Below, in pieces: positions 27,808 through 54,169 of a DNA stretch of 64,000 nt (position 1 is its first letter; the number at the start of each line of letters is the position of its first letter). Source of the DNA: Octopus sinensis (lineage: Eukaryota); NCBI RefSeq assembly GCF_006345805.1, contig NC_043016.1:27342001-27406000 (forward strand). Direction: 5' to 3'. The position numbers were made by a program, and so were the translations under genes. Below the pieces are notes generated by a model that saw only the letters and a list, made by a program, of their open reading frames with translations, had not been told where the DNA came from and did not search any database.

Positions 27808-27838
<31 letters not shown>

Positions 27839-27860
27839 ATATAATATGTATGTATGTTTT

Positions 27861-27955
<95 letters not shown>

Positions 27956-27992
27956 TTTATATATATATAATATATATATGTATGTATGTTTT

Positions 27993-28029
<37 letters not shown>

Positions 28030-28080
28030 ATATATTATATATATATGTATGTATGTTATATATATATATGTATGTATGTT

Positions 28081-28150
<70 letters not shown>

Positions 28151-28182
28151 TATATATTATATAATATATATGTATGTATGTT

Positions 28183-28217
<35 letters not shown>

Positions 28218-28246
28218 TATATATATAATATATATATATATGTTTT

Positions 28247-28285
<39 letters not shown>

Positions 28286-28305
28286 ATATATATATATATA
28301 GTTTT

Positions 28306-28338
<33 letters not shown>

Positions 28339-28409
28339 ATATATATATATATATGTTTTTATATATATATATATATATATGTTTTTATATATATATATAT
28401 ATATGTTTT

Positions 28410-28442
<33 letters not shown>

Positions 28443-28456
28443 ATATTATATATATG

Positions 28457-28511
<55 letters not shown>

Positions 28512-31500: not shown

Positions 31501-32111
31501 CAATGATGTAGCTATTAAACTTCACAACAGAACATGTGTAAAATGTGGAAGGGTGTCCCTCTCGGTTGGAGACCTAAAAAGACACATTAAGAGAGTGCAT
31601 ATGATGGAACTTGTTTCTCCTGCCAGCCAGCACAGTTGTCTAGTATGTAATAAAATGTGTAAAAGCTTGGCTGGGCTGAAAAGTCATATAAGGGCATCAC
31701 ATGGCAACAGTAATGAATCATTTCAGTAAGTCTTCTTGGCAATGGTTTTTCTCATGTTACAAGTGTGCAGCTATGATGTATATATGTGTATTATATATGT
31801 GTATGTATATATGTATGTGTGTATATATATATATATGTTTGTATGTATATATGTATGTATATCATCATCCTCATATATATATATATGCATGTGTATATAT
31901 ATATGTAAATATATATATGTATATAATACAAATAAGAAAATGGAGGAACAGATTCATTTCAATCATCGACTTACAAATATTACCAATTCATATTATTTAT
32001 TAACTACTTAAATAGGAACATACAAATCCAACAAAATAAAACAATATACACCTTATGTATATTATTATATATATATACTTATATATATGTATATATATAT
32101 ATATAATATTA

Positions 32112-32169
<58 letters not shown>

Positions 32170-32515
32170 CACTTATGTATATATATATATATATGTATGT
32201 ATATATATATATATATGTATGTATATATATATATATGTATATATGTATATACACTTATGTATGTATATATATATATATATATATGTATATACACTTATGT
32301 ATATATATATATTATATATATGTATATACACTTATGTATATATATATATATATATATATGTATATAACTTATGTATATATATATATATATGTATATACAC
32401 TTATGTATATATATATATATATATATGTATATACACTTATGTATATATATATATATATATATGTATATACACTTATATATATATGTATATATATATATGT
32501 ATATACACTTATGTA

Positions 32516-32547
<32 letters not shown>

Positions 32548-33214
32548 TATGTTATATATATATATATATAATATGTATATATATATGGTATATATATATA
32601 TATTATATATATGTATATATATATGTATATATATATATATGTATATATATATGTATATATATATATTATATATATGTATATATATATGTATATATATATA
32701 TGTATATACACTTAGGTATATATATATTATATATATATATATATTCTTGTGTATGTGTATTTTGTTTCATATTTATATTTGCATTTTTATATTTTTATAA
32801 TTGTACTTTATAATCTCTGACGAGGCCTTGAGATAGATATATATATATATAAGTAACTCATTTTTAACTACATATTACCTCAATACATCTGACTAATATA
32901 GACAGAATGAAATACCTTTATCTATAGGCTGAAACAGCTGTAAGATCTATTTTGTGTGTATTATTTTTATGGTATTATCTTATTGATGTATATTGTTTTA
33001 TTTTGTTGAATTTGGATGTTCCTATTTATGTAGCTAATAAATAATATGAATTGGTAATATCTGAAAGTCAATGATTGAAATGAATCTGTTCCTCCATTTT
33101 CTTATTTGTATTATGAATTTGAGGTAAAATATTTTACCTTCGCTCATCTAATACAATAAATGAATTAATTGCTTTGCAATTATAAGCATTTATGTATTTG
33201 CCTTGCGTATATAT

Positions 33215-33275
<61 letters not shown>

Positions 33276-36200
33276 TGCGTATGTATATGTGTGTGTATAT
33301 ATATATGAATATGTGTGTGTGTATATGTACTAGGGTTGATTTGTTCAACATAACTTTCAACGCAGCGCCACTGCATGGCTGTAGTCCAATGACTGAAACA
33401 AGTAAAAGAAATATTATTTTTAAAAGATTTTTGTATTAATCAAATTATCAATTTAAAGTTTATAAAATTTAAACAAGTTATTTTTTTTTTAAATGTATTA
33501 ATTAGATTGTTAACCTAAGGAACATGAAAATTATTTAAAGATAGTTTTATTTAAAAACAATTTTTTTATTAATTAAATATTTTGCATTTTTTTTTTTTTA
33601 AGGTTAATGAAACACGGAAATATTCCTGCGAGAAATCGGATTACAAAAGAAAGCACACAATTGGCCGAAGGCGTGCTGTGTCTCGCGTGGTTACATATGA
33701 TGAATCTGTTCCACTCTACGAAGCATTTGTCCGTGCTGCAGAACTACGCGAAAAGAAATCGGAAACAGCCAGAGACAAAAACCATGGCAATGTTTCCACG
33801 CCTTCTATGTCATCCGTCCGAGAAAATGACAAAGGAAGAGAAGACATCAGTGCCACCAGCAGCACCACCCCTGTCATCAATGATAGTACCAAGACCAAAA
33901 AATATCTCCGTAGTGTTAATCACAAGAGTAATACATTACTATCATCAGAGTTGCAACATGGTGTGAAGAAAAGAAAAAATTTGAAGAGATTGCAGTTGAA
34001 AAACGATGCCTTAAAGATGAAAAATCAGAGGAGTGAGGTACAGATAAAAAAGCAAACAGGAAAAGGCCGTCCCAAAAAGTCGGCATCATTGCCTTCATCC
34101 TCCATGCTATCATCAAAACGAACTTCTTCATTAAGAACCAAAAAAACTATTTCAAAATCAAATGTCGATAACTTATTGCGGTTAAACAAAGGTAAAAAAC
34201 TCTCCGTGTGTCTAATACGTTTGAAGCGTGAAGCAAGTTTAAACGCTGCTGCAAAAGTGAATTTGATATATAATGAAAGTTTACAGTCTCCTTCATCAAC
34301 TGTTTTATCATCACCGTCTTCAGCATTTTGTTCTTCACATAGTGGTGGTAGCAAGCAGACAACACAAACACATGCACTTGGATCTAGAACATATAGACAG
34401 ATGAAGAAGAACAAACATAAAATTGTAAATAAAACTAAAAATGCACGAGGTTTGCGTCTGAAACGAGACAGCAGCTTAGCAACAATTAGTTCTCCTGCAA
34501 ATTCTTTAACTCCCTCACCTCGTTCTTCTTCTTCGCGTTCTTCTTGTTCTTCCTCTTCTTTGTGGCAATGCAAATCTGTTGCAGAGATGATTACAGTGAA
34601 GAAGAGAAAACCTGGAAGAAGGAAGCAACATGATACTTCTTCTTCATCCTCATCTTCATTTTCTTCTCCAAATAGAAGTAAAAGACAATTAAAAACAAAA
34701 ACAAAGAAACACAAAGGACCCTCATTGTCTATAGCCAAAAAGTCACTTGAACCAAAAAAATCCAGGCTCAAAAAGTGTCACACAGTTAGATCAACTCGAA
34801 GACAACAACAACAACAACAGCAGCAGCAGCAGCGAAAGAAGAAGAGTAAAGAATTGGAAGAAAGGAAAAAGCATTTAAAATTTTCTCAGACTGAAAATCT
34901 TGTTAAACCTGTGCTGAATCGAAAATTGAAAGAGTGTAATATTCATGAATTAGACTCCTCCTCGTCAAATTTACTGCAGAGTGACAATGCTAAAGGTGTT
35001 GATGTGATTTCGTCTCTCCCAGTTTCAGCATCAAAAAAACGCAACTTAGGGTTTATGTCAGCACAAGAATATTATGTTGGTGCAAGTAATATTAAATCAA
35101 TTCCAGCAATGAAAAAACACAGGAATGAATATCTATCGCCTTCTAAACTCATTCCTAGTAATGCTAAGACAACTTCCTCAATATCAATACCACTATCGGA
35201 GAATCGTAAGTTAAAGTTTCAAACTTCGTTATCATCAACTTGTCGCAGGAGTTGTTATACTTGCCGTTTACAAGCAGGTGTTCGATTGAAAGAGTTTGAA
35301 ACCAGGTGTGAAAAGGCAAATGAAGAGCTGCAGCATGATGCAAATATGAATAAAGCAATTATGAATCATGGTCAATGTGCAAAAGACTGCATCACATGTC
35401 ATCTTGGAGCAGATATGCGGTTAAATGAATATGAATGCGATGAGACAAATTGTAAAATAAACATGAATGACGGAATATACCAAGGAAATGACATATTGTC
35501 TTGTCATTTAAGAGCAGGATTAGAAAAATATCGAGTTGGTTGTGAGGCAGACAGTAGTGGGACGCAGTGTCACAAAAACTGTATCATTTGTCATCATTTC
35601 AGTTCAGGTATGGGTGGTTATCATGTCGGCTGTGAAAATAAAAACATGGAAGGGGAACGAAATCCAAACAATGATGGCATAGCAGTTGTGAATGCGTGTC
35701 GTTTTGTTCAAGCTAACGATGCTCCATCGCCTCTACTGGCACCAACATCAACGCTGCCTTCACATGAAAAAAATTGCAGTGCAGCTTTAGAAAACTCAGT
35801 GACTCTGATGCAGTGTTGTCACCAGCGTCAGCATCATCACCGCCATCATCACCATCTTAACCAACACCCGCATCTATCTCCTTTGGAAAATCCCCAAAAT
35901 TTATTCCGAAATCAGAATCCAGCAGAGAGTAGTAAAAAGCAGCGAACTCTTAAAAAACTGGAGCATAACGAAGCAATTGATGAAGATCTAGATGTTGTCA
36001 CTGTTCCAGATGATAACCCTGCTACGAAGTATTTGAATTTCAATGTAAAAGACAATTATCAATGCCGAGCAATGAGTTGTAATGTTATACAAGAAAAATT
36101 CACTAATGCTAATGAGGAATTAATTAACAAGCGATTAACTAATATTGACATTTCCACTAACGACTCACATGCAGATTGTGAAAATTTAAAAAACATTAAA

Positions 36201-39200
36201 TCTTTGAAATTGCCCAATGATGATGGAATTGATGAAACAATAGATGGATCTGATGTGATTGATGTTGTAGGAGATGAAGATATATCTGCTAGCCCTGATT
36301 ATCGTCAAAATCTGATATCTAATTTTAAATTTGGAGAAACAACACTCGGTAATGACAACCGCCATGACCACCAGCACAAGCATGACGACAATGATGATGG
36401 TAATGATAGTAGCAAACAGTGTAAATCTGTTAATGATTTCAAATTTGAAAAATTAACATTAACGAACAAGCAAAACAAAAAGTTTGGTTTTGGTGTTGCC
36501 GTTGCTGTTTCGTCTGGTTCATCATCATCATCATCATCTTTGTTAGCTAATGAGTTTTCTCGCTCAAATTGTTATCAAAGTTTAAATTCTAACAGAAATG
36601 ACAGCATTAGTAATACTACTAATAATAAAAAAAATCCAGGAAAATCTACTGCGAAATCACTACATTTTACAAATTTACAAGCTCTCAAATCAAATGAAAG
36701 ATTAGATGGCGCTAGTACTGCTGATGCAGTATCAACACCAGCATTGACATCAGCTAAAGATACACATGCTAATTATCCAAATTTAATTATTATTGGAGAT
36801 GATGACAATAAATTAATATATCCTACTAAACGATCAGCAACTGAAGTTGTAGGAGATGTACATCCCAAAAAAAGATGTTATAAGTACACACCACCTTTAG
36901 ATGGTATTGGAAGCAGCCGTTTTCCTTCTAGTACTGCTGGTGCAACAACTACTACTTCATTTGGGCTGTGTAGTAACAAATATTATTATTGTAGTAGTAG
37001 TAGTAGTAATAGTAGTAGTAACGATGGTGGTGTTAGTAATATGAAAAATACTTTTGTAAGTAATAATAATATTAATAGTATTGATAATAACAAGCTTGGT
37101 GGTGTTTGTGCGAAAGAATTGTATTGCTCCAATGAGGAACAGTATATTTGCTATGAAGCTAATTGTCAGAAGCATTCGCCTATGATGGAAAATTCATTAC
37201 GCAAAGTTCCAAAAAGCCTTGCTGATTTAAATATTCCATCTTATGAAACTTGTTCAATGACAACAAAGAGAACAATCACACCAAAGGAACTGAATAAATT
37301 AAAGTTGTCAAGAATTGGTAGTTTACAAGGAAAAACTTGGGGAAAACATACGATGATAGCAAAAGGAATGGTGGAAAGATCGGATAAGTGTAAATTGACT
37401 GAGAAAAGTGCTGGTTTTAATGAAGAAACTTGTGGAAATCATCCAGTGATGGCAAAACGAGTGATAGAGAGATCAGATAAATGTAATTTGTCTGGTAAAG
37501 GTGCTGATTTTCATGGAAAAAATTGGGAAAAGCACAACACAAAGATTGCAAAATTTGTGCCCAGAAAAAGGTCACAAAAAGTTGCTGGTTTTCATGGACA
37601 GAATTGGGAAAAAGATGCAAGGGTTTCAAATTCAGTGTCTGGGAAAACATTTGAGAACATTGCTGGTTTTCATGGAGAAAACTGGGAAAAACATACTGCA
37701 GGGATTTCAAATTTAATGTCTGGGAAAACCCCTGAAAACATTGGTGGATTCCATGGACAAATTTGGGGAAAAGATGCAGTGGTTTCAAATTTGGTGTCTG
37801 GAAAAATATTTGAAAATGTTGCTGGTTTTGATGGAGACAACTGGGAAAAATGCACTACAGGGATTTCAAATTTGGTATCTGGGAAAAGATCAGAGAAAGT
37901 TACAGGTTTCAGTGGACAAACTTGGGAAAAAGATGTTAGGATTTCAAATTTGGCATCTGGGAAAACAAATGAGAATATCTCTGGTAGGTTTCATGGAGAA
38001 GATTGGGAAAAATGCACAACAGGAATTTCAAATTTGATGTCTGGGAAAACCTCCAAAAATATTAGTGATTTTCATGGACAAGATTGGGAAAAAAATGCAG
38101 GGGTCTCAAATTTGGTGCCTGGAAAAGCGTCTGCGAAAATCACTGATTTTGACTCCAAAATATGTGAAAAAAATGCAATGATTACAAACTTGATGTCAAA
38201 GAGAAAGGATGAGTGTAAAGTATCTGAGAAACTCACTAGTTTTGAAGGAGAAATTTGTGGAAAAGACACAGTGGTGGCAAGTTCATCATCAAGAATAGGT
38301 GAATATAAAACAGCTGAGAAATTTGCTAGTTTTGAAGGAGAAATTTGTGGAAAACCTCCGTTGATTTCAAAAGCAATGCCAGAGGGATCGGACAAATTCA
38401 AAATATCTCAAAAAATTGCTAGTTTTGATGGAGAAATTTTTGATAAAAATGCGGTAATGACTAATTTGATGCCAGAGAGATCAGATGGATTTAAAATATC
38501 CAATAAAATCACTAGTTTTGATGGAGAAATCTGTGATAAAAATGCAGTGATGACAACTTTGATGCCAGAGAGATCAGGAGAATTCAAAATATCTGAAAAA
38601 ATTGCTAGTTTTGCTGGACAAACTTGTGATAAAAGTGCAGTGATTTTAAAATCAGTACCAGCATGTTTACCTTCTCCAGAAGCAAAACGGTCCGGAAACA
38701 TTGCTAGTTTTGCTGGACAAACTTGTGATAAAAGTGTGGGTATTTTAAAAGCAATGCCAGCACATAAATCTTCTTCAGAAGCAAAACTATCTGCAGACAT
38801 TACTAGTTTTGACGGACAACCTTGTGATAAAAGTGTGGTGATTTTAAAATCTATACCAGCATGTATGCCTTCTCCAGACGCAAAACTATCTGCAAATATT
38901 GCTAGTTTTGATGGACAAACTTGTGATAATTGTCCAGCGGTTGCAAAATCGCTGTTAGAAAGAAAAGCAGGGAAAATTCAGTTAGCTAGGAAAAACGTTG
39001 CAGCTTTTGATAGACAAAGTTGTGACAAAAAAAAACACCCGGTGATGAGCATGAGAAAATCAGTACCAAAGAAACCAATTGAATGTAAATTTCCAAAAGA
39101 AATTGCTTGTTTTGATGCTACAGAGTGTTGTGAAAGTCATTTTATGATGGAAGAATCACTGCAGCATCATGGTGAATGTAAGGGGTCAAAAAACCTTGGC

Positions 39201-42200
39201 GTTGAGAGAGAAACTTGTGGAAAATCTTTGTTAACAAAAGGGTCACTATTGCATACACCAAGTAAAGTATCTCTGAGAACTGCAAGCCTTTGTACTGATG
39301 TACAGTCTTGTAAACATCACTTAGTGATGGAAGAATTGTCACAGCTTTCTCATGGTAAATCAAGTACATTTAAAGGATCAAAAAGAGTTAGTGCTGAGAG
39401 AGAATCTTGCAGAAAATCTTTGTTAATGAAAGGGTCTCCATCACATAAACCAAGTAAGACGTCTTCAAGAACGTCAAGCCTTAGCCGTGAATTACAATCG
39501 TCGTGTAAAAAACATTCATCTTCAGAGGGATCCCTAGCATATAAAGCACATAAATGTAAGAGTATTGCTGGTGATAATCTTAAAATGCAACCATGTACGA
39601 AACACATGTTGAGAGAAAAGCCACTACGAAAATCTAGTAAATTAACTGAGAAAGCCACAAGACTTGATCTTAAAACAGAATCATGTAGCAAACATATAAT
39701 GCCAAGAGAAGCACCAGTGCGAAAATCAAGTAAACTAACTGAGAAACCTACAGGACTTGATCTTAAAGCACAGATGTGTAGGAAGTTTGCAGTAACAAAG
39801 GAATGTGAGTCATTACCAGTTAAGGCGTCAAAGAGAATAGCTAGTCTTAATGCTCAAGCAATAATGGATCTTTGCCAAGAAACTCGGCAGTCAAGACGAG
39901 ACTTGAACCAAGATAGTCATCGTTCTGCGAGAACTCATTACATATTTAATCCAAGACGGCAATCCTGTCGGTGGGTGAATGGTCTTGGGATGATTTTGAT
40001 GAATAATATGGCAGACGGTGAGGATTTAAGTAATGAAGATGAGGATATATTGAGCCAGAAGATGTTGAGTAGCTGCTCAATGACAGGGCTTGGTGTGAGT
40101 GCCGATGCAACAAAAATAGTCTGTTCGGCCAGTGGTACTAATAGCAACACTATCTGCAGTGGTGTGAAGAACAACAGCAAGAAATTGGCTGCCGCTACAA
40201 AAAATAATAATAACAATAATAATAATAATATTTCTAGAGATGTTGACATGCGAGTGCTCAGTGATATCTCACCCTCTGATGACTGCAGTGTTGATATGCA
40301 AATAAAGAAGCAAAACAGCAGCAGCAGTAGCAATAACAGTAGTAGTGGCACCACCACATGCGACACAGCAACACTGACGACAAAAAACAAAAATTTGAAT
40401 TCAAATTCAGCATCATCACTATCTTCATCATCCTCATCAAAATTTTCAAATGTTAATAACATCGTATCGCATCCTAAAACCACTCCGTCGACAGATTCTA
40501 CAAAAACTACTCACCCTAGTTGTTCTTCACTTCCGTGTATGCTTGGAGCAACGGGAGCTGGGAGGGATAATTCTACTCACAGTCAGTGCCAAGCATTCAC
40601 CTTAACAGGGATTGGAAGTATTACAAATTTCACCAATGTTCCTTATCATCCTCAGACTTATGGAAGAGGGCAATTTTCTGTTCCTTGCAGTCATTATGGT
40701 GAGTTAATGTTTCATTTCTTCATTATGATATGTAATAATAAATTTTTGGACTTTGTAACTCTCTACCAACAAAATATGCAAATATATATACATATATATC
40801 TATGTATGCATACAGAAGAATTTAAGATGGGCTGCCCCTGGGAGCTCGTCTATGCTGATGACATTGTTCTTATAGCTGAATCACTACTAGAACTAGACAA
40901 GATTTCAGGTATGGAAATAAGGCTAGAATCAAAGGGTCTTAGAGTTAATCTAGCAAAAATCAAAGTCTTAGTAAGTAGGAAGGTAGACAAATTACAAATG
41001 CCTTCAAGCATGATATATTACCAACAGTCTCGGTCACCCATCATTACATCTGTGAGGCCCCAGAACTAAAAGGTGCTTTTTACATGCCACTGGCATGGGT
41101 ACCAGTTATGTGGCACTGCTCAATCTGTAGAAAAGGCATAGGTAGAAACGCCATGAGATGTAACCAGTGTAAGCTATGGACACATAAGAGGTGCAGCAAT
41201 ATCAGAGGAAGGTTAACGGGGAAAATAGTTTGTGTGTAGGTGCACAGGTACAATTAACACTAAAAATGTACAGAAAATAGACTCCATCAAAATGCCAGGG
41301 GGAAAAACTTGTAGTAGTTGATAGCTTCCATTACCTAGGTGACCAAGTCAGTAGTGGAGGTGGATGCTCCAAGAGCATAGCTGCTAGAATAAGAATTAGG
41401 CTGGGCAAAGTTCAGAGAGCACCTACCTCTGTTGGTAACAAAGGTCCTCTCCTTCAGAGTTAAAGGCAGATTGTATGATGCCTATGTGTGAACAGCCATG
41501 TGACATCACAGTGAAACATGGGCTGTGACTGCTGAGGACATGTAAAAGCTTAAAAGAAATGAAGCTAGTATACTTTGCTGGATGTGCAATGTCAGTATGT
41601 ATGCACGACAGAGTGTAAGCGTCTTGAGGGAAAAGTTGGATATAAGAGACATCAGGTAGAAGTGCCAACCTCTAATAGTGGAGAGAGCTTGTGGAAGATG
41701 TAGACCTAGGAAAACGTGGGACGGTGTGGTAAAGCATGATCTTCAAACGTTGGGCCACACAGAGGCAATAACAAGTGACCAAGACTGTTGGCGATATGCC
41801 ATGCTTGAGAAGACACGTCAAGCCAAGTGAAATCATAGCCATGGCTGATCCCAGTGTTGTGTAACTGGCATCTGTGACAGTGGCATGTAAAAAGTACCTT
41901 TTGGATATTGGGCAATATGCTGTGCTTCAGAAAACCCATCAAGCTAAGTGAAATCATATTCATGGCCAATGCCAGTGTCACATAATCGGCACCTGTGTCA
42001 CATAAAAAGCACCCTTCAACTATAGGCCGCACGTAAGCAGTGACAAGTGACTCAGACTGTTGGCAGTATACCATGCTTGAGAAGACTGGTCAAGGCAAGT
42101 GAGATCATAGTCATGGCCAATGCTGGTGTTTCAAAACAGGCATGTAAAAAGCACCCACTACACTCTTGGAGTGGTTGGTGTTAGGAAGGGCATCAAGTTG

Positions 42201-45200
42201 TAGAAACCATGCCATATCAGACTGGATCCTGATGCAGCTCTCCAGCTTACCAGTTTTCAGTCAAACCATCCAACCCTTGTCGGCATAGAAAATGGACATT
42301 AAATGATGATGATGGTGTATATATACATATATGTATGTATATATACACACATATTTGCGTGTGTGTGTGTATATATATATATATGATCCAATTCACTTAT
42401 ACCCACTTCACTGTACATTGAAGATATGCCCCAATAAATCTTCACTTTCATCTTTTTTCTTCTGACTTGACAATATTTGTTTCTATTTTACTTTAATCTC
42501 TCATCAACTACCATGAAGCTACCTGCCCCAATATTAAACCTCCTCTCAGTTGATGAGTTTTCATCATACAAGATGAAAACCTATCAACTGAAAGGGGGTT
42601 TAGTATTGAGGCAGGTAGTTTTGTGGTAGTTGGTGAGAGATTAAAATAAAATGTTTTTGTGTGTGTGAGTAGGAGTCCACTAGGGTTCATTTCAGTCCTC
42701 CAAGTTATAACTGAGGAATTCAAGACTGGCTGCCCTTGGGAGCTCCTCTATGCCAATGACTTTGCTCTTATTGCTTAATCACTAGCAGAACCAGAGAAGA
42801 AATTTCAGGTATGGAAGTGCAGACTGGATGCAATGAGTTAATTAGAGTTAATTTTTCAAAGACCAAAGTATTAATAGAAAACAAGCAAATTACAGATCCT
42901 TTCATGGAGATGGCTCTGCTTGATATGTAGAAAAGGTGATGGGAGAAACTCCATAAGGTGTGACCCAGTGCAAGCTATGGACACATAAGAGATGCAGTGA
43001 TATCACCAGAAGACTAACAGAGAATGTAGTCTTTAGATATGGCAGATGTGCAAAATAGAGACTCTGTCAAATGTCAGGGGATATCCTTAGAAGTGGTAGA
43101 CAGTTTCCGTTACTTAGGTGAACAAGTTAATAGTGGAGGAGGTTATTCTGAAAGCACAGTTGCTAAAATAAGAATAAGCTTGGCGAAGTTCTTAATTAGA
43201 TGGATTTTAGGCAATGTGCAACTGGTCCTAGCAGTAGTTCTTTCCATTTGAGAAGAACCAAATCATCTCCAGCTCAATAGGTTGCCTCAGCTTGTTCAGG
43301 TGCTTCTATGGCTTTGTGAAGCAGTTCTCTGTGGTTGTCCTTTGGCTGTCAGAATTTCTCCCTTGCACCTCTTGTATGAGTGGGAGCAAAGGTTCTCATT
43401 CAGGCTCAGCTTCAAGAGGGTGACTCCAACACACATCCATCTTGCCAAAACCCAGATTCCCTTGCTCAGATCTTCCATCGTCTTTAATAAATTCTTTGAT
43501 ATTTTCAAAATTAATTGAAAAAAACAAAAAGTACCATTGTGTTTATTTTGGTACCAAACAACTTTACACAAACCCTAGTTCTATGATACAAACTATGTTT
43601 TAATGTATTAATTTATGTTTTAAACACCAGATTAATTCCTGACAGTTTATAAATTCTTTATAATTTTCAAAAATTGATTGAAAAAATCTGTATTGTATTT
43701 CATCCAAAATATGGTAACAAAAGAATAAAACCCTTTTCATAGCAATCCAACTGAGGACCACCTTTGGTTCTATGACATAAAAGGCAGTGTATTTCAGAAG
43801 AAATATACTAACAAAAGGGTCAAATGAGCATCATATTTCAAAGTCTATTTTTGTAATTAAATATGTTTTTATTTTTCACTGCAGGTTATTATCCAAATGG
43901 GAATTACTGCTCTCATCCTACGCCAATGGTTCCACAGTTGTCAGAACCTTGTGTTCTTAGTCACTCTTTACCAATTCATGTGCCACATGCAGAGGTTAAG
44001 GTGCTTATACACAATCCAATCCCAACACAACCCTTGTACAACATCCAACCAATGATGCAACGATGACAACTGCCGCTGTGAGCAACAACAGTTCTTCTGT
44101 GCAACCACAAAAAGTGCCATCACAGCAACAACGGCGAGGACGCAATGTTGGTGGAGGCACAAAGAAGAAGACATCAAGACTATCGTTGATGCGGTCACCT
44201 ATATCTAAAAGCAAAACTAAAAGTGTTGGTGTAAGACTTGGTGTTGAGAAGAATGAAGGGAAGGATCTCAGAAAATCTGAGACAAAGAAGAAGACCAAAA
44301 TTAATAATAATAATAATAACAATAACAACAACAACAATAATAATAATAACAACAACAACAACAGCAACAACAACAATAATAACAACAATAACAATAATGA
44401 TAAAAATAATAATAATAATAATAATAAGAGAAGCCAGAAAATTTTGAAAAAGGCTGCACCAATGAAAGACAATCTTAAGAAAATAAATCTCTGTGGTTGT
44501 GATATAAAAGAGATTTCCTTGGATAAGAGCGAAAGGTGTTTGATGGTTTCCAAAAGAAAGAAGACTTATTGTGGGTGGTCATGGGAAGGTGTGCCGGAAA
44601 TGAAAGCAATACTTAACGTGGTGAGATTGTTTGCATTTAATTTTTTCCTTTCACATCTTTTGTCTTTTACTCGTTTCAGTCATTGGACTGAAAGGTACCA
44701 CCTTGATTGCTTCAGTTGAACAAATTGCCCTCTGTACTTATGTTATTGCTTTTAAGTCTAGTACTTAATCCATAAGTTGCTATTACAGAACCACTAGACT
44801 ACAAGGATGTAAATAAACCAAAATCAGTTCAGCAGTGTGTGAGAACAAGTACATACTTACACATATGGTAAAATAGAAAAAGAAAGGATACAGTAAATTT
44901 GCTGTAGGGAGTGGAAAATCCAGTGTTTTGGACAGGGATCTTCTTCAGTGAAAAGTGGAAGGAAAGAAATGCAAGTCTTGCCAACACAGACAAACAGCAT
45001 AACCTTTGGATTCTGTCTTATTTTACATATTTGTTTGCATGTGTGTGTGTGTAAGTCATCTAAAAGTCCGTAAGTCAGGAAAAAATGCACTTGTATATCT
45101 GTCAATAGGGTAGGTATATTATCTGAAGTGTACGGTATTATATATCCATTACGGCCGATCTTACAAATCAGTTTCGTGCTAGGGATTCAACAGTGTTATG

Positions 45201-46402: not shown

Positions 46403-49400
46403 CATCATCATCTAGCGTCCGCTTTCCATGCTAGCATGGGTTGGACGGTTCAACTGGGGTTTGTGAAGCCAGAAGGCCGCATCAGGCCCAGTCTGATCTG
46501 GCAGTGTTTCTACGGCTGGATGCCCTTCCTACGCCAACCACTCCGTGAGTGTAGTGGGTGCTTTTTACATATATAAATGTACATGTAAGTGTAAATGTAT
46601 ATATAATGGACTCTCCCATTGAAGACAACGTGTGAGTATTTAGCTTTTTTGCCAAACAACCTGCAAATATGATTTGCTTATAGTGATCAAATATGTACTG
46701 TACATTAGTTCACTCTCTCCATCAAATTGATGTTACCTGAAAAGGTGCACAGTTTGCCATTTGTCAGGTGTTGAAGTGATCACAGAGCAATGTGAGATGA
46801 AGTGTTTTGCTGAAGAACACAACAAACCACCTGGTCTAGGAATTAAACCGTTGTCTCACCCTGACCACCAGGCCATGTTTCCTCACACACGCACACATAT
46901 AATGAAAATAAATAAAACAAAAGAATAGAGATAAATTAATCCAGGCAAATATTTTTTCGAGTAGTCTTTAGTGACGGTTCTTGGTTAACTAGACTGATGA
47001 GTGATAATCATTGTGTAGTTTATAATCCAGCTATTACTATTGTACACATTTGATTAGTAAATCCAAATTTTGTTTTTGACAATTTCAGAGTATAGTATAA
47101 AAGATTGACCAATTTGTTCTTTCATAGTAATGCCTTTTCCTATGAACATTAGTATAAGCAACTTAGCTGACCTAAATAATATAGTTTGGTACTACCTGGA
47201 ATTTATTCATCTTATCCATTTTTATCTAATTTAGTCTGGGTCAGTAAAAGGTTTGACTATGCCTGAAGGTCTTGCAGTACCATGTTCTTATACCACTTCA
47301 ACCTTATTTGATTTACTTTTTATATTGATTATACTTCCCTTCACCCATTGATAGCTTTGGACAGCATTAGGCTGTTTACTACTATAGAAACTCTTACAGT
47401 ATCAAATTTTAATACTACTTCAACCTTTTTAATTTAACTTTTATAATCGATGTTTTTCCGGTCTATGTGATACTGTAGTTATGGATTGATTTAACCCTCT
47501 TGGGACACCCAAACCAATTGATCAGCCCAAGTGATACAAGCTGAAAGGATTTTGAGTTCAATCCATTGGCCCAATAGAACAAATGTTGTGAATGGTTGGT
47601 TTTGGAGTGTAATAGCTAATTAGAGGTAGATGTATCTCAATAGAAAAAAACTTTGATCTTTTTGGCTACACATACCAAAACACCATGTGTCTCAAAAGGT
47701 TAAGTGCAGAATTAACCCAACACTAACTCATCTGAAACATGCATAGACAAATTATGGATCATAAATTATGAAGTAAAAATATATAATTCTTCATTCTTTT
47801 TGTGTTGGAGCTTGCTTCCCAACCACATGGTTCCGGGTCAGTACCACTGTGTGGTACCTTGGGCAAGTGTCTTCTAATATAGCCTCAGGCCAACCAAAGT
47901 CTTGTGAGTGGATTTGGTAGACAGAGCCTGTGTCTTTGTGTCTGTTTGTCCCATCATACCACTGGACAACTGGTGCTGGTGTATTTATGTCCCTATAATT
48001 TAGCAGTTTGGCAAAAGCAACCTATTGAATAAGTACCATGCCTTAAAAAAAAGTAAGTACTGGGGTCTAGGCATTCAACTAAAAATTCTTCAAGGCAAAG
48101 CCCCAGCATGGCCACAGTCTAATGACTAAACAAGTAAAAGATAAAAGATAAAATATATATTCACACATACACACAAGTATTTATGTGTGATTGTATGTGT
48201 ATATTTTATCTTTTACTTGTTTCAGTCATATAAAATTATATGTTTTGTTACATCATCCTATATAGGTCATTTAATACTTGATATTTTGAGAAAGAATTCA
48301 TTTCATGGAATGGAATATAAGATAGAAAATCTATCCAAAATTTCAGAAAAAATGTGTATTTATTGGCAGGCTATTCTGCTCTGCTCTACTAAAATGTGTG
48401 GCTTTATTGCTGCCTTCCTTTTGTTCAAAATGTTGGTACATTTTGAATTAAACAAGATTTCTTTTTGTAATTTATGGACAGTGATGAAAATAATATTGTA
48501 CCATCCTAAATGGGTCATTTAATATTTCAGGAAATGCTTCTCTTTATCAAATATAAGGTAGAAAATCATGTAAGAATTCAGAAGAAAAAAAAGATTTATT
48601 TGTCTAATTTATGCTCTCTTTCTCTTTTGCTCATTTTTCAGACTGTTGATGCTCCACCGGTTGAGCGTAAATGCTACCCGGCCATCAAACATGATGATGG
48701 AGATATTATTCGCGTTAGAGATTGTGTTCTGTTGAAGTCTGGGCCTCGCAAGAAAGATGTACCATTCACAGCAAAAGTAATGGCCTTCTGGGAAAACCCA
48801 CCTGATGGTAAGTGCTGTGTTTTGTGTGTATCTAGGTGGTAGATTTTTTTCTTTTTAGCTTTGAAATATCACAAAATACATGAAAATAGTCTCTTCCACT
48901 TTCTCTTCTTCATCATTTAACATCTATTTTCCATGCTGGCATGGGTTGGATGGTTTGACTGGAACTGGTATGGGCCAAGGGCTGTACCAGGTTCTATTGT
49001 CTTTGGTGGCGTGGGTGTTTTTAACATGGTACCAACACCAGTATCAATTATGGCAGATGAGTCTTCTTTAGTACAGCAATATGCCAGATATCTTGGTCCT
49101 TAGTCATCTTCTTCACTAAACTCAGTGTTTCGAGATTGGCCTTCAATGCTTTGTCTCATGTCTTCCTGGGTCTCTTCTTTTCCGCCTTTTTTCCTTCTTT
49201 CATCCCCTCTTCTTCATCCTTCTCTTTTTCTTCTGTTCCTCCTCTCCATTTTCATGCTTCTTCCTCATTCTCTGCTCTCATCTTCCTCACTTTTGTTCAT
49301 TGCATCTACCCTTCCTTTCATGCCAGCCACTCCAACATGGCTTCCTCAGTCTCTGTGTTTAGCTTTGGCACATCTTTGACAAAGTATTGTCCATCTCTGC

Positions 49401-51794: not shown

Positions 51795-54169
51795 TAAGAA
51801 GCTTACTTCCCAACCACAGGGTTCTGGATTTAGTCTCACTGCATGGCAACTTGGGCAAGTGCCGTCTGTTATATCCTTGGGATGACCAGAGCCTTGTGAG
51901 TGGATTTGGTAGACGGAAACTGAAAGGAACATGTTGTGTGTGTATGTCTTTGTGTCCCCCCCCCCCCATTGCTTGACAGCCAATGTTGGTGTGTTTACGT
52001 CCCTGTAACTTAGCGGTTAGGCCAAAGAGACCAATAGAATAAGTACTAGGCTTACAAAGAATAAGTTCTGGAGTTGATTTCTTCGACTAAAACCCTTTAA
52101 AGGTTTTATCTCTTTTTATGTCTAGCATGGCCACAGTCAAATGACTGAAACAAATAAAAGAATACACACATACACACACCTTTGTCCCTCATTTTATTTT
52201 ACTTTTTATCTTTTTACATGTTTTTATGTTGTCTATGAATTCTTCATAGGGGAAATGATGATGAGTTTACTCTGGTACTATCGACCTGAGCATACTGAGA
52301 CTGGTCGTAAACCCAGTCATGTAGACTGTGAAGTGTTCGCTTCGAGGCACCGTGACGTCAACAGCATAGCTTGTATAGAAGAGAAATGTTACGTGTTAAC
52401 ATTCAACGAATACTGCAGGTACATCATGGTTTTCCTTTTATTTTTTTTATCCCCTGTCATCACCATCATTTTAACATTCACTTTTCCCTGCTCAAATGGG
52501 TCAGACACAATTTGTAAAGGCAGATTTTCTATGGCCTGATGCCAACCATCCCCTGTTTCAAAGTAAGGTAATAGTTCCCTATGGCCAGACATGTTTTCCT
52601 AGAAGATTGGAACACAAAGGACACTGTTTGTATGACAGTAACACTTAAAAGTTTCACACATCAAGGCAAGGAGATAGTAATACACACTCACTCAAACACA
52701 CACATACACATGATGGGCTTTTTTCAGGTACTACTGATAATGCAAAGCAGCAATAGAATCATTTTGTTCGGCATTTATTCACTTTTCTGTTCAGTGGCTG
52801 CTCTCAATTTATCAACTGTAAAATTTATCTTTTAAATATTCACCCACCAAAACAAAAAAATAGAATATCTAGTAGTGTGAAGTCCAATGAAAGCGAAGAG
52901 TATTCCACTGAACCTCTTCAGCTGATCTACCTGTTTGGCAGAAACTCATCAAAGTAGGCCCTTACGTTACTGTGGTGGCACGCAGATGCCCTATCTTGTT
53001 GGAAATAAAGCTCCTTATCTTCAAAGTACTTTTGCATACTTGACATAACAGATTATCAGAGCTAGTTTAAGTAAATGGGACCAGTTACAATACTATCGAA
53101 AAGATTGGTCCAATTAATATTTATGATGTTAAGCCATGCCATACCATCATTCCTGGCAAATTAACATACTGTTCCTCCATAATACACTGAGACTCAGATC
53201 GCCCCAGTAAATGCAGTTGTGGTAGTTAATTGCACCATTTGAACTAAATATAGCCTCACTAATCCAAACAATCTTTGTTAGAAAGTGTGCATCTTCTAAA
53301 CATCTTGTCAGGTACCACTTGCAAAACTCCACTCTTCAGTTCAGATCATATTCATTAGGACCATGGAAATGTAACTTTTCTAATGATGCTACTTCAAAAT
53401 GCAACAGATGCTTGATTTTAAAATTCCTATCTCATGACTCGCTTGCCACACAGAATTAGTGCCCTTCCTTACTTTGTGGGTTTGATATCTGCAGTTTTCT
53501 AAGAGACTGAACAGTTTCATCTGCTACAAACTTATCTCTAATTCAAGTGATGGTAAATCGCATATATAGCTCTGTTTGAAACTCCCTCCTAAACTGTCTT
53601 TTTTTTTTACATTTTTCAAACTTGACAATAAACTTTGTTCACAGCTTAGTCAGGCTCCCTTCATTATTTCTTAAGGGTTAAATCTAAAAAAGAAATGAAA
53701 GTTGAATTTTCAGTTGTTAAAGTGTTTATACAGTTTTGGGGAACACCCTTATATATGTGTGTGTGTTGTTGGAAAAATACCAATGTTGTTTTCTCTCTTG
53801 TCGGGTTATTAATACTGGAGAGAAATTTCACCTAGATATTATTACATTCAAAACATTATAGCAGCTTAATTAGATAATGAACTATGTATACAATTAATAA
53901 CTCACTTCCTCCCTCCCTTTCTCTGTATCACACATACTTACTTATGCCTTGTTCCACCCTTCTTTCTTCATTTTATTAACAGGTATAAAGCAGAAGTACG
54001 GAGAACTGAAGCAAATTTTCCAGCAAGACGGAAAGTTGTCCCACGACTTACAGAAGCTTATCCCAGACACAGCCGACTTCCTCCTCTCGATGCCAACCCT
54101 GAGACTGTTTTCCTTTGTCGTCAAGTTTATCAATTTAGACAGAGACGTTTTCTAAAAAAACCTGCATAG
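7113..54169 (+). CDS. BAHD1: BAHD1-like chromatin reader gene, six coding exons, about 2,770-2,813 aa depending on how the exon-3 frame break is resolved
   Basis: The spliced C-terminus reads ...[33 protein letters not shown]|[14 protein letters not shown]...[30 protein letters not shown]|Y...[22 protein letters not shown]. This matches the BAHD1 BAH domain as recalled ([14 protein letters not shown]...[14 protein letters not shown]...EVFASRH...[12 protein letters not shown]...VFLCRHVYDFR). Two ASLNA motifs are also present. GT-AG junction phases are 0,1,0,1,2, all compatible. Confidence 0.9.
7320..8930. repeat. Degenerate tandem array, about 9 units of ~190 bp
   Basis: GTCGAC-like cores at 7336, 7527, 7714, 7907, 8096, 8297, 8486, (8641, truncated) and 8824, with recurring blocks GAGAAAGTAG and AGGAGTCCATCCATGCCTAACAC. 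Confidence 0.85.
9403..9620. mobile_element. Non-autonomous mariner-type element (MITE)
   Basis: TIR-like ends CAGAGGGTGTTCTGAAAAGTTC / GAACTTTTCAGCACCCCCTTG-TA. Confidence 0.7.
10050..10870 (+). mobile_element. Highly decayed Penelope-like element (RT C-terminus plus GIY-YIG remnant)
   Basis: [28 protein letters not shown] resembles the PLE RT thumb region. [14 protein letters not shown] and HFHLAG resemble the GIY-YIG region of PLEs. Confidence 0.6.
12371..13591 (-). mobile_element. Decayed Tc1/mariner-superfamily DNA transposon
   Basis: TIRs CAGGGTGTGCTGTAAAGAAT / ATTCTTTACAACACACACTG. Transposase remnant [14 protein letters not shown]...VMVWLAVS...FMQDSAPSH. Confidence 0.8.
19330..21630 (-). 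mobile_element. Decayed Penelope-like retroelement (RT plus GIY-YIG endonuclease)
   Basis: [60 protein letters not shown] and IYKVEV...IYIGST across ORFs 21034-21453, 20498-20968 and 19699-20172. Confidence 0.85.
21950..23560 (+). mobile_element. Decayed CR1/L2-group LINE
   Basis: [62 protein letters not shown]. Confidence 0.85.
23559..23768. repeat. ~210-bp palindromic foldback
   Basis: CTTGTGTTATATGGTTAA/TTAACCATATAACACAAG and AATATATTATTGGTTTTC/GAAAACCAATAATATATT, centred on TTTTGATATATATCAAAA. Confidence 0.85.
24275..26090. mobile_element. Cluster of 3' fragments of one abundant RTE LINE family, two on the minus strand and one or two on the plus strand
   Basis: [44 protein letters not shown] recurs at 24462-24680 (-), 24993-25460 (-) and 25837-25960 (+). 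Confidence 0.85.
26560..26830 (+). mobile_element. Possible non-autonomous Helitron/Helentron-type fragment
   Basis: TATATAAAATCCGTTCTGTCTGTCTG...CCGATTGCACTGAAATTTG layout resembles such elements; recall only. Confidence 0.35.
27760..28520. repeat. Compound (TA)n/(TATG)n microsatellite
   Basis: Directly visible; produces spurious YI-rich ORFs. Confidence 0.97.
28520..31745 (+). mobile_element. Nearly full-length but disrupted RTE-clade LINE (APE, RT, two C-terminal C2H2 fingers)
   Basis: LMSLRL...[12 protein letters not shown]...LGDFNA (APE); [18 protein letters not shown] (RT); CVKC...LKRHIKRVH and CLVC...[10 protein letters not shown]. Confidence 0.88.
32050..32745. repeat. (TA)n-based minisatellite with recurring ATGTATATACACTT unit
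   Basis: Directly visible; roughly ten copies of GTATATACACTT. Confidence 0.95.
32813..32946 (+). ncRNA. Candidate minimal type-I hammerhead ribozyme (Penelope/retrozyme type)
   Basis: ATCT-CTGACGA-G-GCCT...AGGC-T-GAAAC-AGCT-GTA-AGAT. Stem I ATCT/AGAT; stem II GGCCT/AGGCT plus ATAGAT/ATCTAT; stem III with palindromic AGCT loop; predicted cleavage after GTA (32942). Confidence 0.6.
33603..40698 (+). CDS. BAHD1: Giant coding exon 2 (7,096 nt): basic/low-complexity N-terminal region, two ASLNA motifs, tandem repeats
   Basis: Part of the 2,495-codon ORF 33582-41069. Acceptor (t)n-aag|GTT at 33603; donor TAT G|gtgagt at 40699 (phase 1). Confidence 0.85.
40810..41830 (+). mobile_element. Decayed RTE LINE 3' portion (same family as 24275-26090) in intron 2
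   Basis: [18 protein letters not shown]; later GAGGAAAAGTTGG...AGACCTAGGAAAACGTGGG...AGAAGACACGTCAAGCCAAG. Confidence 0.85.
42720..43195 (+). mobile_element. Second decayed RTE fragment of the same family in intron 2
   Basis: GCTGCCCTTGGGAGCTCCTCTATGC..., [19 protein letters not shown]. Confidence 0.8.
43885..44620 (+). CDS. BAHD1: Coding exon 3, with a frame discontinuity near 43995-44066 and a poly-Asn tract
   Basis: Acceptor ttttcactgcag|GT TAT (phase 1). The second frame ends [21 protein letters not shown]|gtgaga (phase 0), corresponding to the pre-BAH NGW segment of BAHD1. The two halves are in different frames. Confidence 0.7.
44301..44428 (+). repeat. Coding (AAY)n trinucleotide tract, poly-Asn
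   Basis: [41 protein letters not shown] in the exon-3 frame. Confidence 0.9.
47495..47699. mobile_element. piggyBac-type MITE
   Basis: TTAA-CCCTCTTGGGACAC ... GTGTCTCAAAAGG-TTAA: short TIRs with TTAA flanks. Confidence 0.55.
48642..48807 (+). CDS. BAHD1: Coding exon 4, N-terminal part of the BAH domain
   Basis: ttttcag|ACT GTT GAT; [56 protein letters not shown]|gtaagt. Confidence 0.95.
49662..50216. mobile_element. Tc1-type non-autonomous element with a nested SINE-like insertion (about 49995-50180)
   Basis: TA-CAGAGTGTCTGTAAAGTCTGGACACATAGG ... CCTATGTGTCCAGACTTTGGGGACACCCTG-TA. Confidence 0.8.
50290..50640 (-). mobile_element. tRNA-derived SINE
   Basis: Reverse complement begins GGCGTGACTTAGTAGTTAAGG...GAGTTCGATTC (A-box and B-box-like). 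Confidence 0.6.
51790..52165 (+). mobile_element. Best full-length copy of an abundant tRNA-derived SINE. Other copies or halves at about 14005, 14580, 15260(-), 18700(-), 18915, 21650, 47808, 49450, 51393, 51550(-), 56030, 60925, 61440(-) and 63855
   Basis: Recurring GTAAGAAGCTT(G/A)CTT..CAACCAC..GGTT...CAGTCCCACTG....ACCTTGGGCAAGTG...GTGAGTGGATTTGGTAGACGGAAACTG head and GAATAAGTACTAGGCTT...AGCATGGCCACAGTCAAATGACTGAAACAA tail. Confidence 0.8.
52250..52418 (+). CDS. BAHD1: Coding exon 5, BAH domain core
   Basis: tcttcatag|GG GAA ATG; [57 protein letters not shown]|gtacat. Confidence 0.95.
52950..53750 (-). mobile_element. Decayed Tc1-like transposase remnant
   Basis: [41 protein letters not shown] resembles the F.DEA.F..NG.VN.HN.RYW motif; one TIR-like end GGGGAACACCCT. 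Confidence 0.55.
53983..54169 (+). CDS. BAHD1: Terminal coding exon 6, end of the BAH domain (not in the ORF track)
   Basis: ttaacag|G TAT AAA; hand translation [64 protein letters not shown]. Confidence 0.93.

What the first reader, a model, noticed from the sequence alone, without database searches (positions are those of the whole stretch)
37317..39788. Unrecognised 26-36-aa tandem repeat region (~20 clear plus ~8 degenerate units) in the BAHD1-like protein
The core is [AT]-[GS]-F-[HDE]-G-[EQ]-x-[WC]-[EDG]-K. The array shows a gradient of expansion history: alternating ~26/27-aa W-type units ([26 protein letters not shown] / [27 protein letters not shown]), then 31-aa units (SFDGEICDK), then 33-aa units (SFAGQTCDK), then decayed ETC/ESC units. 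F, G, W/C and K are held while the linkers drift, which suggests protein-level constraint. It could be a multivalent interaction or condensate scaffold attached to an H3K27me3-type BAH reader. I know of no such repeat in BAHD1.
Basis: partly seen in the sequence, partly recalled or inferred. Interest (0 to 1): 0.75.

Follow-up and report, generated by a model that had tools for sequence, protein, structure and literature searches.

The report
Orphan protein repeat in BAHD1-like gene
A real and previously undescribed run of about 28 short protein repeats lies in the giant exon of an invertebrate BAHD1-like chromatin gene, but it evolves almost neutrally, so it is more likely a loosely constrained flexible spacer than a new functional domain.

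Summary
Twenty clear units of 26-35 aa (37317-39104) and eight decayed units (39105-39848) lie in frame inside one 7.1-kb exon (33603-40698).

The repeat matches no Pfam family and no PDB sequence. A unit profile found nothing credible among 1.84 billion representative proteins. The libraries also hold no ortholog of this exon, so copy number across species could not be checked.

Protein-level constraint is weak:
- Non-synonymous/synonymous ratio is 0.54, against 0.74±0.12 under a matched neutral model (P≈0.025).
- Only F, G and K are held beyond neutral expectation; W/C was not scored separately.
- The silent sites of the F, G and K codons are held too (3 variant codons, against 11-14 expected). 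The core is therefore partly conserved as DNA.

The closest units are only 84% identical, so the array is old and is not an active minisatellite. The AlphaFold2 model is a low-confidence β-solenoid (pLDDT 41), a known artefact for repeats.

The downstream BAH domain is BAHD1-type with the W-x-Y cage. As assembled, though, the array's reading frame stops at 44061-44063, before the BAH exons. A gastropod ortholog has one frame there.

Verdict: an orphan, weakly constrained coding repeat, probably a flexible multivalent spacer. Modest interest.

The parts
33603..40698 (+). Giant coding exon (7096 nt) that contains the array. It is Lys/Ser/Asn-rich and low in complexity.
   Evidence: ORF 33582-41069. 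Acceptor is TTTTTTTTTTTTTAAG|G and donor is G|GTGAGT. The ORF tail beyond 40698 is an intronic reverse-transcriptase fragment. The 3' end of the exon is homologous to a gastropod ORF, L001 26-784.
37317..37502 (+). Units u1-u2, 31 aa each, of the old type. They are 73% identical to each other and 69-71% identical to u13.
37503..38141 (+). Units u3-u10: the W-type block of 26-28-aa units (F-H-G-x-x-W-E-K ... I-S-N-L-[MV]-S-G-K). It forms a two-unit, 159-nt higher-order repeat.
   Evidence: TRF period 159, score 640
38142..38603 (+). Units u11-u15: 30-31-aa C-type units (S-F-[DE]-G-E-I-C-[DG]-K).
   Evidence: TRF period 93
38604..38999 (+). Units u16-u19: 33-aa C-type units (S-F-A-G-Q-T-C-D-K) with a Pro-rich insert.
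   Evidence: TRF period 99, 81% matches
39000..39104 (+). Unit u20, about 35 aa and divergent.
39105..39848 (+). Eight decayed units t1-t8, with a Cys-x-Lys anchor every 30-33 aa. They include a 192-nt and a 93-nt internal duplication.
43885..44620 (+). The next exon. Its acceptor is phase-compatible with the giant exon. Its first part (to about 44050) is read in the giant exon's frame. Its second part encodes ...[23 protein letters not shown], the lead-in to the BAH domain.
44036..44063 (+). Frame discontinuity. The array's frame ends at TGA 44061-44063, and the BAH-encoding frame is open from 44000, with an ATG at 44063.
   Evidence: tblastn of the gastropod exon matches in two different frames; translation
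48642..48807 (+). BAH exon 1
52250..52418 (+). BAH exon 2, which carries LLWYYRPEH with the caging W and Y.
   Evidence: PMC8096256
53983..54169 (+). BAH exon 3 and the stop codon.

Best explanation
The region is an old, lineage-restricted, in-frame coding tandem repeat inside the long low-complexity N-terminal (scaffold) part of an invertebrate BAHD1-like gene.

How it arose: it grew by unequal crossing-over from a unit of about 31 aa. One sub-family lost 5 aa, changed Cys to Trp (TGT to TGG) and expanded as a two-unit block. Another gained a Pro-rich insert.

How it has evolved since: expansion stopped long ago, and the units have drifted under weak purifying selection. Only a short motif is held: aromatic-x-Gly-x-x-(Trp/Cys)-x-Lys.

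Inferred, not shown: the array is a flexible spacer that displays about 20-28 copies of this short sticky motif. These copies would give low-affinity, multivalent contacts, either with itself or with a partner of the repressor complex. I do not think it is a folded domain.
For: - Real and in frame: all unit lengths are multiples of 3, and there is no stop codon in 28 units.
- Orphan: no Pfam, PDB or representative-library relative.
- Block structure and age: the best pair of units is 84% identical, and dS is at least 0.22 for every pair within the three unit classes compared.
- Weak synonymous excess in the true frame only. Ratios are 0.54 in the true frame, against 0.73 and 0.94 in shifted frames. 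The matched neutral simulation gives 0.74±0.12, P=0.025. The tail duplicates give 0.52 and 0.47.
- F, G and K columns are conserved beyond a tree-based neutral simulation. The gap statistic gives P<1/600. P(at least 3 columns conserved in 17 or more of 20 units) is 0.107-0.002, depending on rate calibration.
- Composition is 27% charged and 24% hydrophobic. Trp is 1.5% in the array, against 0.1% in the rest of the exon.
- There is no confident fold: pLDDT is 41.
Against: - The constraint is marginal.
- Within-class non-synonymous changes are not over-dispersed among columns (P=0.37), and the four quietest columns are unremarkable once the post-hoc choice is accounted for (P=0.20).
- Silent sites of the F, G and K codons are also conserved. 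Only 3 of 54 units carry a variant codon, against 11-14 expected (P=0.026-0.001), and the core Gly codon is GGA in 17 of 17 units, against 32% GGA elsewhere in the exon. Part of the 'motif' conservation is therefore at the nucleotide level.
- There are no transcript, ortholog or binding data.
- Several hydrophobic positions recur in each unit, and AlphaFold2 draws three strands per unit, so a folded repeat is not excluded.
Confidence: 0.5

Rival explanations
1. The array is a neutral exonised minisatellite. It has no function of its own. It stays open only because a stop or frameshift would cut off the downstream coding sequence. The conserved core reflects DNA-level processes, such as gene-conversion tracts or purine-rich exonic splicing enhancers needed to define a 7.1-kb exon.
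For: - The corrected ratio is only about 0.7 of the neutral value.
- Across all 20 units, pN/pS is 0.82.
- Core synonymous divergence is about half that of the linker, 0.27 against 0.50.
- The silent sites of the F, G and K codons are held.
- Non-synonymous changes are not over-dispersed within classes.
- The sense strand is purine-rich throughout.
Against: - The true frame has the lowest non-synonymous/synonymous ratio in 5 of 6 unit classes.
- F, G and K stand out from the other columns more than in any of 600 neutral simulations.
- No pair of units is more than 84% identical, so recent gene conversion is not evident.
Confidence: 0.3
2. The array, or at least the W block, is a folded β-rich repeat domain: a β-solenoid or stacked β-hairpins with one coil per 26-27 residues.
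For: - AlphaFold2 places three short strands per unit in register. pLDDT is 50-64 over the W block.
- The top Foldseek matches are all β-helix proteins.
- Aliphatic, Asn and Gly positions recur in every unit.
Against: - Mean pLDDT is 41 and pTM is 0.38, and all Foldseek E-values are above 2.
- AlphaFold2 is documented to produce unrealistic β-solenoids for arbitrary repeat sequences (PMC11795689).
- Hydrophobic content is 24% and charged content 27%.
- The hydrophobic positions (3, 8, 14, 17, 18 and 26 of the unit) do not alternate as in β-strands.
- Unit length varies from 26 to 35 aa.
Confidence: 0.08
3. The array is a specific ligand-binding platform. Two versions were considered: (a) a Trp-based Argonaute/PIWI-type 'hook' platform, or (b) a His/Cys metal-binding array.
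For: - Nine Trp residues are concentrated in the array of an otherwise Trp-poor exon.
- His precedes Gly-x-x-Trp in 7 of the 8 units of the W block. Odd-numbered W units add His or Cys after Lys. Most C-type units carry a second Cys or His.
- From background knowledge, tandem, fast-evolving Trp repeats serve as Argonaute hooks in other silencing proteins.
Against: - Trp is next to Gly in only 2 of 9 W units, and the other units carry Cys or Phe at that position.
- His is absent from the C-type units.
- There is no sequence match to any known platform.
- Nothing here was or could be tested for binding.
Confidence: 0.06

Closest known systems
Vertebrate BAHD1 (heterochromatin and Polycomb co-repressor scaffold)
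   Same: - It has a C-terminal BAH domain of the H3K27me3-reader type. The best database hits to the window's BAH are proteins named BAHD1, at up to 62% identity.
- The caging W-x-Y is present in LLWYYRPEH (PMC8096256).
- It has a long non-globular N-terminal part. In the vertebrate protein this part recruits MIER1, HDAC1/2 and HP1 (PMC4777444).
   Different: - Vertebrate BAHD1 is about 780 aa with a Pro-rich region and has no described tandem repeat.
- In 2016 it was stated to have no invertebrate ortholog (PMC4777444).
- Here the N-terminal part is about 2400 aa and carries the array.
- As assembled, that N-terminal part is not in frame with the BAH exons.
BAHCC1 / Drosophila winged eye
   Same: It is a large protein with a C-terminal H3K27me3-type BAH domain. 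The BAHCC1 BAH (6vil) matches the window's BAH at E=7e-11.
   Different: BAHCC1 and winged eye carry a tandem Tudor domain that reads H4K20me1 (PMC12219854). No Tudor domain was found in the giant exon or the next exon.
Lineage-specific coding tandem repeats in disordered regions of nuclear proteins (the generic class)
   Same: Units are in frame, expansion occurred in blocks by unequal exchange, selection is weak, only a few residues are held, and there are no relatives outside a narrow lineage.
   Different: This particular unit (F-x-G-x-x-[W/C]-x-K plus [IV]-S-N-L-[MV]) is in no library searched. The units are old, at most 84% identical, rather than recently homogenised.
GW/WG Argonaute-hook repeat platforms (TNRC6/GW182, plant NRPE1 and SPT5L)
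   Same: These are tandem, fast-evolving repeats in silencing proteins, in which Trp is the main conserved residue (from background knowledge).
   Different: Gly flanks the Trp in only 2 units, half of the units have Cys instead of Trp, and there is no sequence match. No binding was tested.
MORN repeats and the copper-binding octarepeat of the mammalian prion protein (both recalled from memory only, as leads)
   Same: They are short repeats built around an aromatic or His residue, Gly, and a Trp a few residues later.
   Different: Neither MORN nor any other repeat family appears in the Pfam scan of the giant ORF at E≤1. The unit length (26-35 aa) and spacing differ. His is present in only 7 of 28 units.
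β-solenoid repeat proteins (tailspikes, autotransporter passengers)
   Same: The AlphaFold2 model has three strands per unit, and these proteins are its nearest Foldseek neighbours.
   Different: All the matches are insignificant (E>2, TM≤0.2). The model has low confidence and is of a kind known to be an AlphaFold2 artefact (PMC11795689).

Membership tests
Any curated protein repeat family (Pfam-A, including MORN and the like) | A profile match at or near the family's gathering score | tested here: not met
   The whole 2495-aa ORF was scanned. The only entry is Phage_TTP_12, at E=0.11 and 12.9 bits against a cut-off of 26.1.
Any protein with a solved structure | Sequence similarity of the unit profile or of the exon to a PDB chain | tested here: not met
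   The unit profile's best hit has E=1.1. The whole exon gives no hit at E≤0.01.
BAHD1-like BAH readers | A C-terminal BAH domain (PF01426) closest to proteins named BAHD1 | tested here: met
   There are 172 hits, all of those listed carrying PF01426. The best hit is 62% identical, and named hits are 'bromo adjacent homology domain-containing 1 protein'.
BAHD1-like BAH readers | Caging residues W-x-Y (human W667 and Y669), needed for H3K27me3 binding | tested here: met
   LLWYYRPEH in exon 52250-52418 aligns with the WYYRPEE of the H3K27me3 reader EBS. The caging residues are defined in PMC8096256. Binding itself was not tested.
BAHD1-like BAH readers | The N-terminal region (here, the array) and the BAH domain form one polypeptide | tested here: inconclusive
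   The splice phases fit, and the gastropod ortholog has one ORF across the junction exon. In the window, however, the frame changes near 44036-44063, and the array's frame meets a TGA at 44061-44063. No reads were available to tell an assembly error from a real change.
BAHCC1 / winged eye | A tandem Tudor domain upstream of the BAH domain | tested here: not met
   No Tudor match was found in Pfam or PDB searches of the giant exon or the next exon.
GW/WG Argonaute-hook platforms | Multiple Trp residues directly flanked by Gly or small residues in a disordered repeat, plus binding to a PIWI-domain pocket | tested here: not met
   Only TWGK (u1) and IWGK (u6) have WG. The other seven are [ND T]-W-E, and eleven units have Cys or Phe at that position. 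Binding is not testable here.
β-solenoid repeat domains | A confident repetitive β-coil structure | tested here: inconclusive
   pLDDT is 41, or 50-64 over the W block. All Foldseek E-values are above 2. The prediction is of a known artefact type (PMC11795689).
Active (hypervariable) coding minisatellite | Near-identical neighbouring units and recent homogenisation | tested here: not met
   Maximum unit identity is 84%, and the lowest pairwise dS is 0.22. Population polymorphism is not testable here.
Sticker-and-spacer multivalent disordered scaffolds | Regularly spaced aromatic 'stickers' in a polar or charged low-complexity chain, plus self-association or condensate formation | not testable with these tools
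   The spacing of Phe and Trp/Cys every 26-35 aa and the composition are as expected. Disorder could not be established, because the charge-hydropathy plot also misclassifies the BAH control. No assay was possible.

The most novel reading that the evidence does not exclude
The F-x-G-x-x-(W/C)-x-K units would be a new multivalent docking platform. On a reader of H3K27me3, about 20-28 copies would recruit a second silencing machine, or drive the protein's own clustering. Candidates are an Argonaute/PIWI-type Trp-pocket protein or the MIER-HDAC module. This would couple Polycomb-type chromatin to another pathway in this animal lineage.
Probability: 0.07. Interest if true: 0.7.

Novelty: new member of a known kind. 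Interest (0 to 1): 0.3.

Why it matters
If the array binds something, it would show how a Polycomb-mark reader acquired a lineage-specific multivalent arm. It would also give a concrete peptide, 8 residues long and repeated 20 or more times, for pull-downs.

As the evidence stands, it mainly illustrates how a giant exon of a chromatin scaffold gene accumulates and then slowly erodes an in-frame repeat.

It also carries a methodological point. Conservation of a few residues across repeat units is not proof of protein-level constraint, because here the silent sites of those same codons are conserved too.

In addition, the frame break between the array and the BAH exons should be checked before any gene model of this locus is trusted.

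Tried and rejected
Searches that found nothing usable:
- A homology search with the array and with the non-repeat flanks of the exon gave no hits. The libraries hold no ortholog of this exon, so copy number across species could not be compared.
- The unit profile against 1.84 billion representatives gave one hit (P0121). It is a 2775-aa protein made of repeats of about 90 aa, fibronectin-III-like by eye. It matches only 12 of the 31 profile positions, many times over. I rejected it as spurious.
- A metagenome scan with a two-core DNA pattern gave 0 hits.
- An exact-product look-up of the giant ORF was not on record.
- The gastropod locus L001 reaches only the last 250 codons or so of the homologous giant exon. 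The unit profile finds nothing in it.
- Rfam finds nothing in the window.
- No Tudor domain was found, so the gene is not BAHCC1-like.

Analyses that proved uninformative:
- The Uversky charge-hydropathy plot also puts the BAH control on the 'disordered' side.
- The AlphaFold2 β-solenoid is not evidence: confidence is low and the artefact is documented.

Readings considered and rejected:
- The antisense ORFs of 109-130 aa inside the array are by-products of a purine-rich sense strand. They are interrupted every 110-130 codons.


Full report
**1. What is there**

The window is AT-rich animal DNA full of non-LTR retrotransposon fragments. A single 2495-codon ORF runs from 33582 to 41069 on the + strand. 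A poly-T/AG acceptor at 33602|33603 and a G|GTGAGT donor at 40698|40699 delimit one 7096-nt exon. The ORF tail beyond the donor is an intronic reverse-transcriptase fragment.

Inside this exon, Tandem Repeats Finder reports arrays with periods of 78/81/159, 93 and 99 nt. Translation gives 20 clear units between 37317 and 39104 (the end of u20 reset from the Cys anchors):

| Units | Length | Type |
|---|---|---|
| u1-2 | 31 aa | old type |
| u3-10 | 26-28 aa | W-type |
| u11-15 | 30-31 aa | C-type |
| u16-19 | 33 aa | C-type with a Pro-rich insert |
| u20 | about 35 aa | divergent |

The loose core F-x-G-x-x-[WC]-x-K occurs 14 times, against 0.0135 expected in a shuffled ORF, and nowhere else in the six frames of the window.

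The whole unit aligns, not only the core. After the core come [IVM], S/A/T, N/K, L, [MV], then K/R, and a final [KN]-[IV]. The 26/27-aa units are 31-aa units that lost five residues.

**2. The degenerate tail**

From 39105 to 39848 a Cys-x-Lys anchor recurs eight times, at spacings of 30-33 aa. The 20-unit profile does not detect these units. A profile-profile comparison aligns them in register (columns 2-26 on 2-26, P=2.9e-4, probability 41%). The tail holds its own 192-nt and 93-nt duplications. I accept them as decayed units, giving about 28 in all.

**3. History of the array**

Pairwise nucleotide identity shows nested blocks rather than a simple gradient:
- u4-u10: 67-83% identical, with odd and even units forming two sub-families. 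This is a two-unit higher-order repeat, in line with the TRF period of 159 nt.
- u13-15: 72-84%.
- u16-18: 82-84%.
- u1-2: 73%, and closest to u13.

So 31-aa units lie on both sides of the derived W block. Trp against Cys is a single third-position change (TGG/TGT).

No two units are more than 84% identical, and the smallest pairwise dS is 0.22. Expansion therefore stopped long ago, and this is not an active minisatellite. I infer that the array should be shared by related species.

**4. Is it a known repeat?**

- Pfam gives nothing.
- PDB sequences give nothing, with either the unit profile or the whole exon.
- A unit profile run with HMMER over 1.84 billion representative proteins gave one hit. 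It is a 2775-aa protein of unrelated repeats of about 90 aa, and it matches 12 of the 31 profile positions many times over. I regard it as spurious.

There is a limit to this result. Neither the array nor the non-repeat flanks of the exon found any relative. The libraries seem to hold no ortholog of this exon, so absence says nothing about close relatives.

**5.

*Overall ratio.* Within unit classes, the Nei-Gojobori pN/pS is 0.53 (W), 0.59 (31-aa) and 0.75 (33-aa). Shifted frames give 0.69-1.24. To avoid counting shared changes twice, I counted changes from each class consensus. This gives 57 synonymous and 121 non-synonymous changes, a ratio of 0.54. The two wrong frames give 0.73 and 0.94.

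A neutral simulation used the observed mutation spectrum (transition/transversion ratio 1.74) and purged stop codons. It gives 0.74±0.12, so the observed value has P=0.025. The two tail duplications behave the same way, at 0.52 and 0.47. There is therefore a synonymous bias, but a small one: about 0.7 of the neutral value.

*Site by site.* Within-class non-synonymous changes are not over-dispersed among columns (P=0.37). The four quietest columns are unremarkable once the post-hoc choice is allowed for (P=0.20).

Over the whole tree of 20 units, F (19/20), K (18/20) and G (17/20) stand out from the other columns more than in any of 600 neutral simulations. The chance of three such columns is 0.107, 0.015 or 0.002, depending on how the neutral rate is calibrated.

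*Silent sites.* The silent positions of these same codons are held too:
- TTT in 17 of 19 Phe codons, GGA in 17 of 17 Gly codons and AAA in 17 of 18 Lys codons.
- GGA is only 32% of Gly codons elsewhere in the exon.
- If only the amino acid were constrained, 11-14 units should carry a synonymous variant. Three do (P=0.026-0.001).
- Synonymous divergence of the core is about half that of the linker, 0.27 against 0.50.

The core is therefore conserved partly as DNA. Candidate causes are conversion tracts, purine-rich splicing enhancers in a very long exon, or accuracy-driven codon choice. I could not separate these.

*Open frame.* Freedom from stops and frameshifts says little about the array itself, because any such change would also cut off the coding sequence downstream.

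**6. Structure**

AlphaFold2 without an alignment gives mean pLDDT 41, or 50-64 over the W block. It draws three short strands per unit, which is a β-solenoid. Foldseek against the PDB returns only β-helix proteins, all with E>2. AlphaFold2 is documented to draw such solenoids for arbitrary repeats (PMC11795689), so I do not count this as evidence. The charge-hydropathy plot was uninformative.

**7. The gene**

Downstream, three exons (48642-48807, 52250-52418 and 53983-54169) encode a BAH domain. Its best relatives are proteins named BAHD1, at up to 62% identity, all with PF01426. It keeps the W-x-Y caging residues (PMC8096256). No Tudor domain was found, so it is not BAHCC1/winged-eye-like in architecture (PMC12219854).

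A gastropod locus (Batillaria, L001) shows homologs of the 3' end of the giant exon and of the next exon. This ties the giant exon to the BAH gene.

The next exon starts at 43885, behind a strong acceptor that is phase-compatible with the giant exon. Its product reads ...[11 protein letters not shown]...[14 protein letters not shown]... and is 50% identical to the gastropod sequence.

In the window, however, this frame meets a TGA at 44061-44063. The rest of the exon and all the BAH exons are open in another frame, which is open from 44000 with an ATG at 44063. The gastropod has one continuous ORF there.

This is either a one-base assembly error or a real change that separates the array protein from the BAH domain. 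The long open downstream frame and the intact BAH exons make an error or a very recent change more likely. Only reads can decide.

**8. Verdict**

The case for protein-level function is weak, and part of the apparent motif conservation is at the nucleotide level.

My ranking of the explanations:

| Explanation | Confidence |
|---|---|
| Old, weakly constrained in-frame repeat acting as a flexible, possibly multivalent spacer in the scaffold half of a BAHD1-like protein | 0.5 |
| Essentially neutral filler | 0.3 |
| Folded β-repeat domain | 0.08 |
| Specific ligand platform (Trp hooks or His/Cys metal sites) | 0.06 |

Interest is modest at 0.3. It is a new member of a common kind.

Noticed in passing
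window 44036-44063 (exon 43885-44620): There is a frame discontinuity in the exon between the giant exon and the BAH exons. The upstream frame ends at TGA 44061-44063. The BAH-encoding frame is open from 44000, and its ATG at 44063 overlaps that TGA. The gastropod ortholog (L001 5770-6537) has one ORF here. This is either an assembly indel or a real split of the gene.
   Followed up: partly
window 35232-35663 (aa 551-694 of the ORF): Four copies of a Cys/His motif, C-x3-C-x2-C-[RH]-[LH]-...-[FY]-x3-C-E, lie upstream in the same exon. It may be a zinc-binding repeat. There is no Pfam or PDB match, and the AlphaFold2 pLDDT is 43.
   Followed up: partly
window about 34225-34270 and 39822-39860: Two similar short motifs, [15 protein letters not shown] and [15 protein letters not shown], lie near the two ends of the giant exon. 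The second immediately follows the last decayed unit.
   Followed up: no
L001 26-784 and 5770-6537 (Batillaria attramentaria, JACVVK020000005.1): The gastropod record annotates only a 170-aa BAH protein. Unannotated ORFs upstream are homologous to the 3' end of the giant exon (RWV[DN]GLG, Q[AS]FTL[ST]G[IM]G, FSVP) and to the next exon. The gastropod gene model is therefore truncated.
   Followed up: partly
window 2248-3745 (+), 4634-6117 (-), 28329-31506 (+), 40800-41460 (+), 43030-43248 (+): These are non-LTR retrotransposon fragments: RVT_1, zf-RVT and an APE-type endonuclease. Two of them lie in the intron just after the giant exon, and one is read through by the ORF tail at 40800-41069.
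   Followed up: partly
window 27771-28301, 32055-32813 and others: Long TA/TATG-type microsatellites produce spurious 'YIYIYI' ORFs of 170-250 codons.
   Followed up: no
window 44300-44440: A run of about 40 Asn codons (AAT/AAC) lies in the exon before the BAH domain. Poly-Q, poly-S and poly-N runs also occur in the giant exon (for example 34802-34833 and 40203-40230).
   Followed up: no
window 37417-39691, - strand: Antisense ORFs of 109-130 codons lie inside the array. They are expected from a purine-rich sense strand and a repeat without antisense stops. There is no sign that they are genes.
   Followed up: partly
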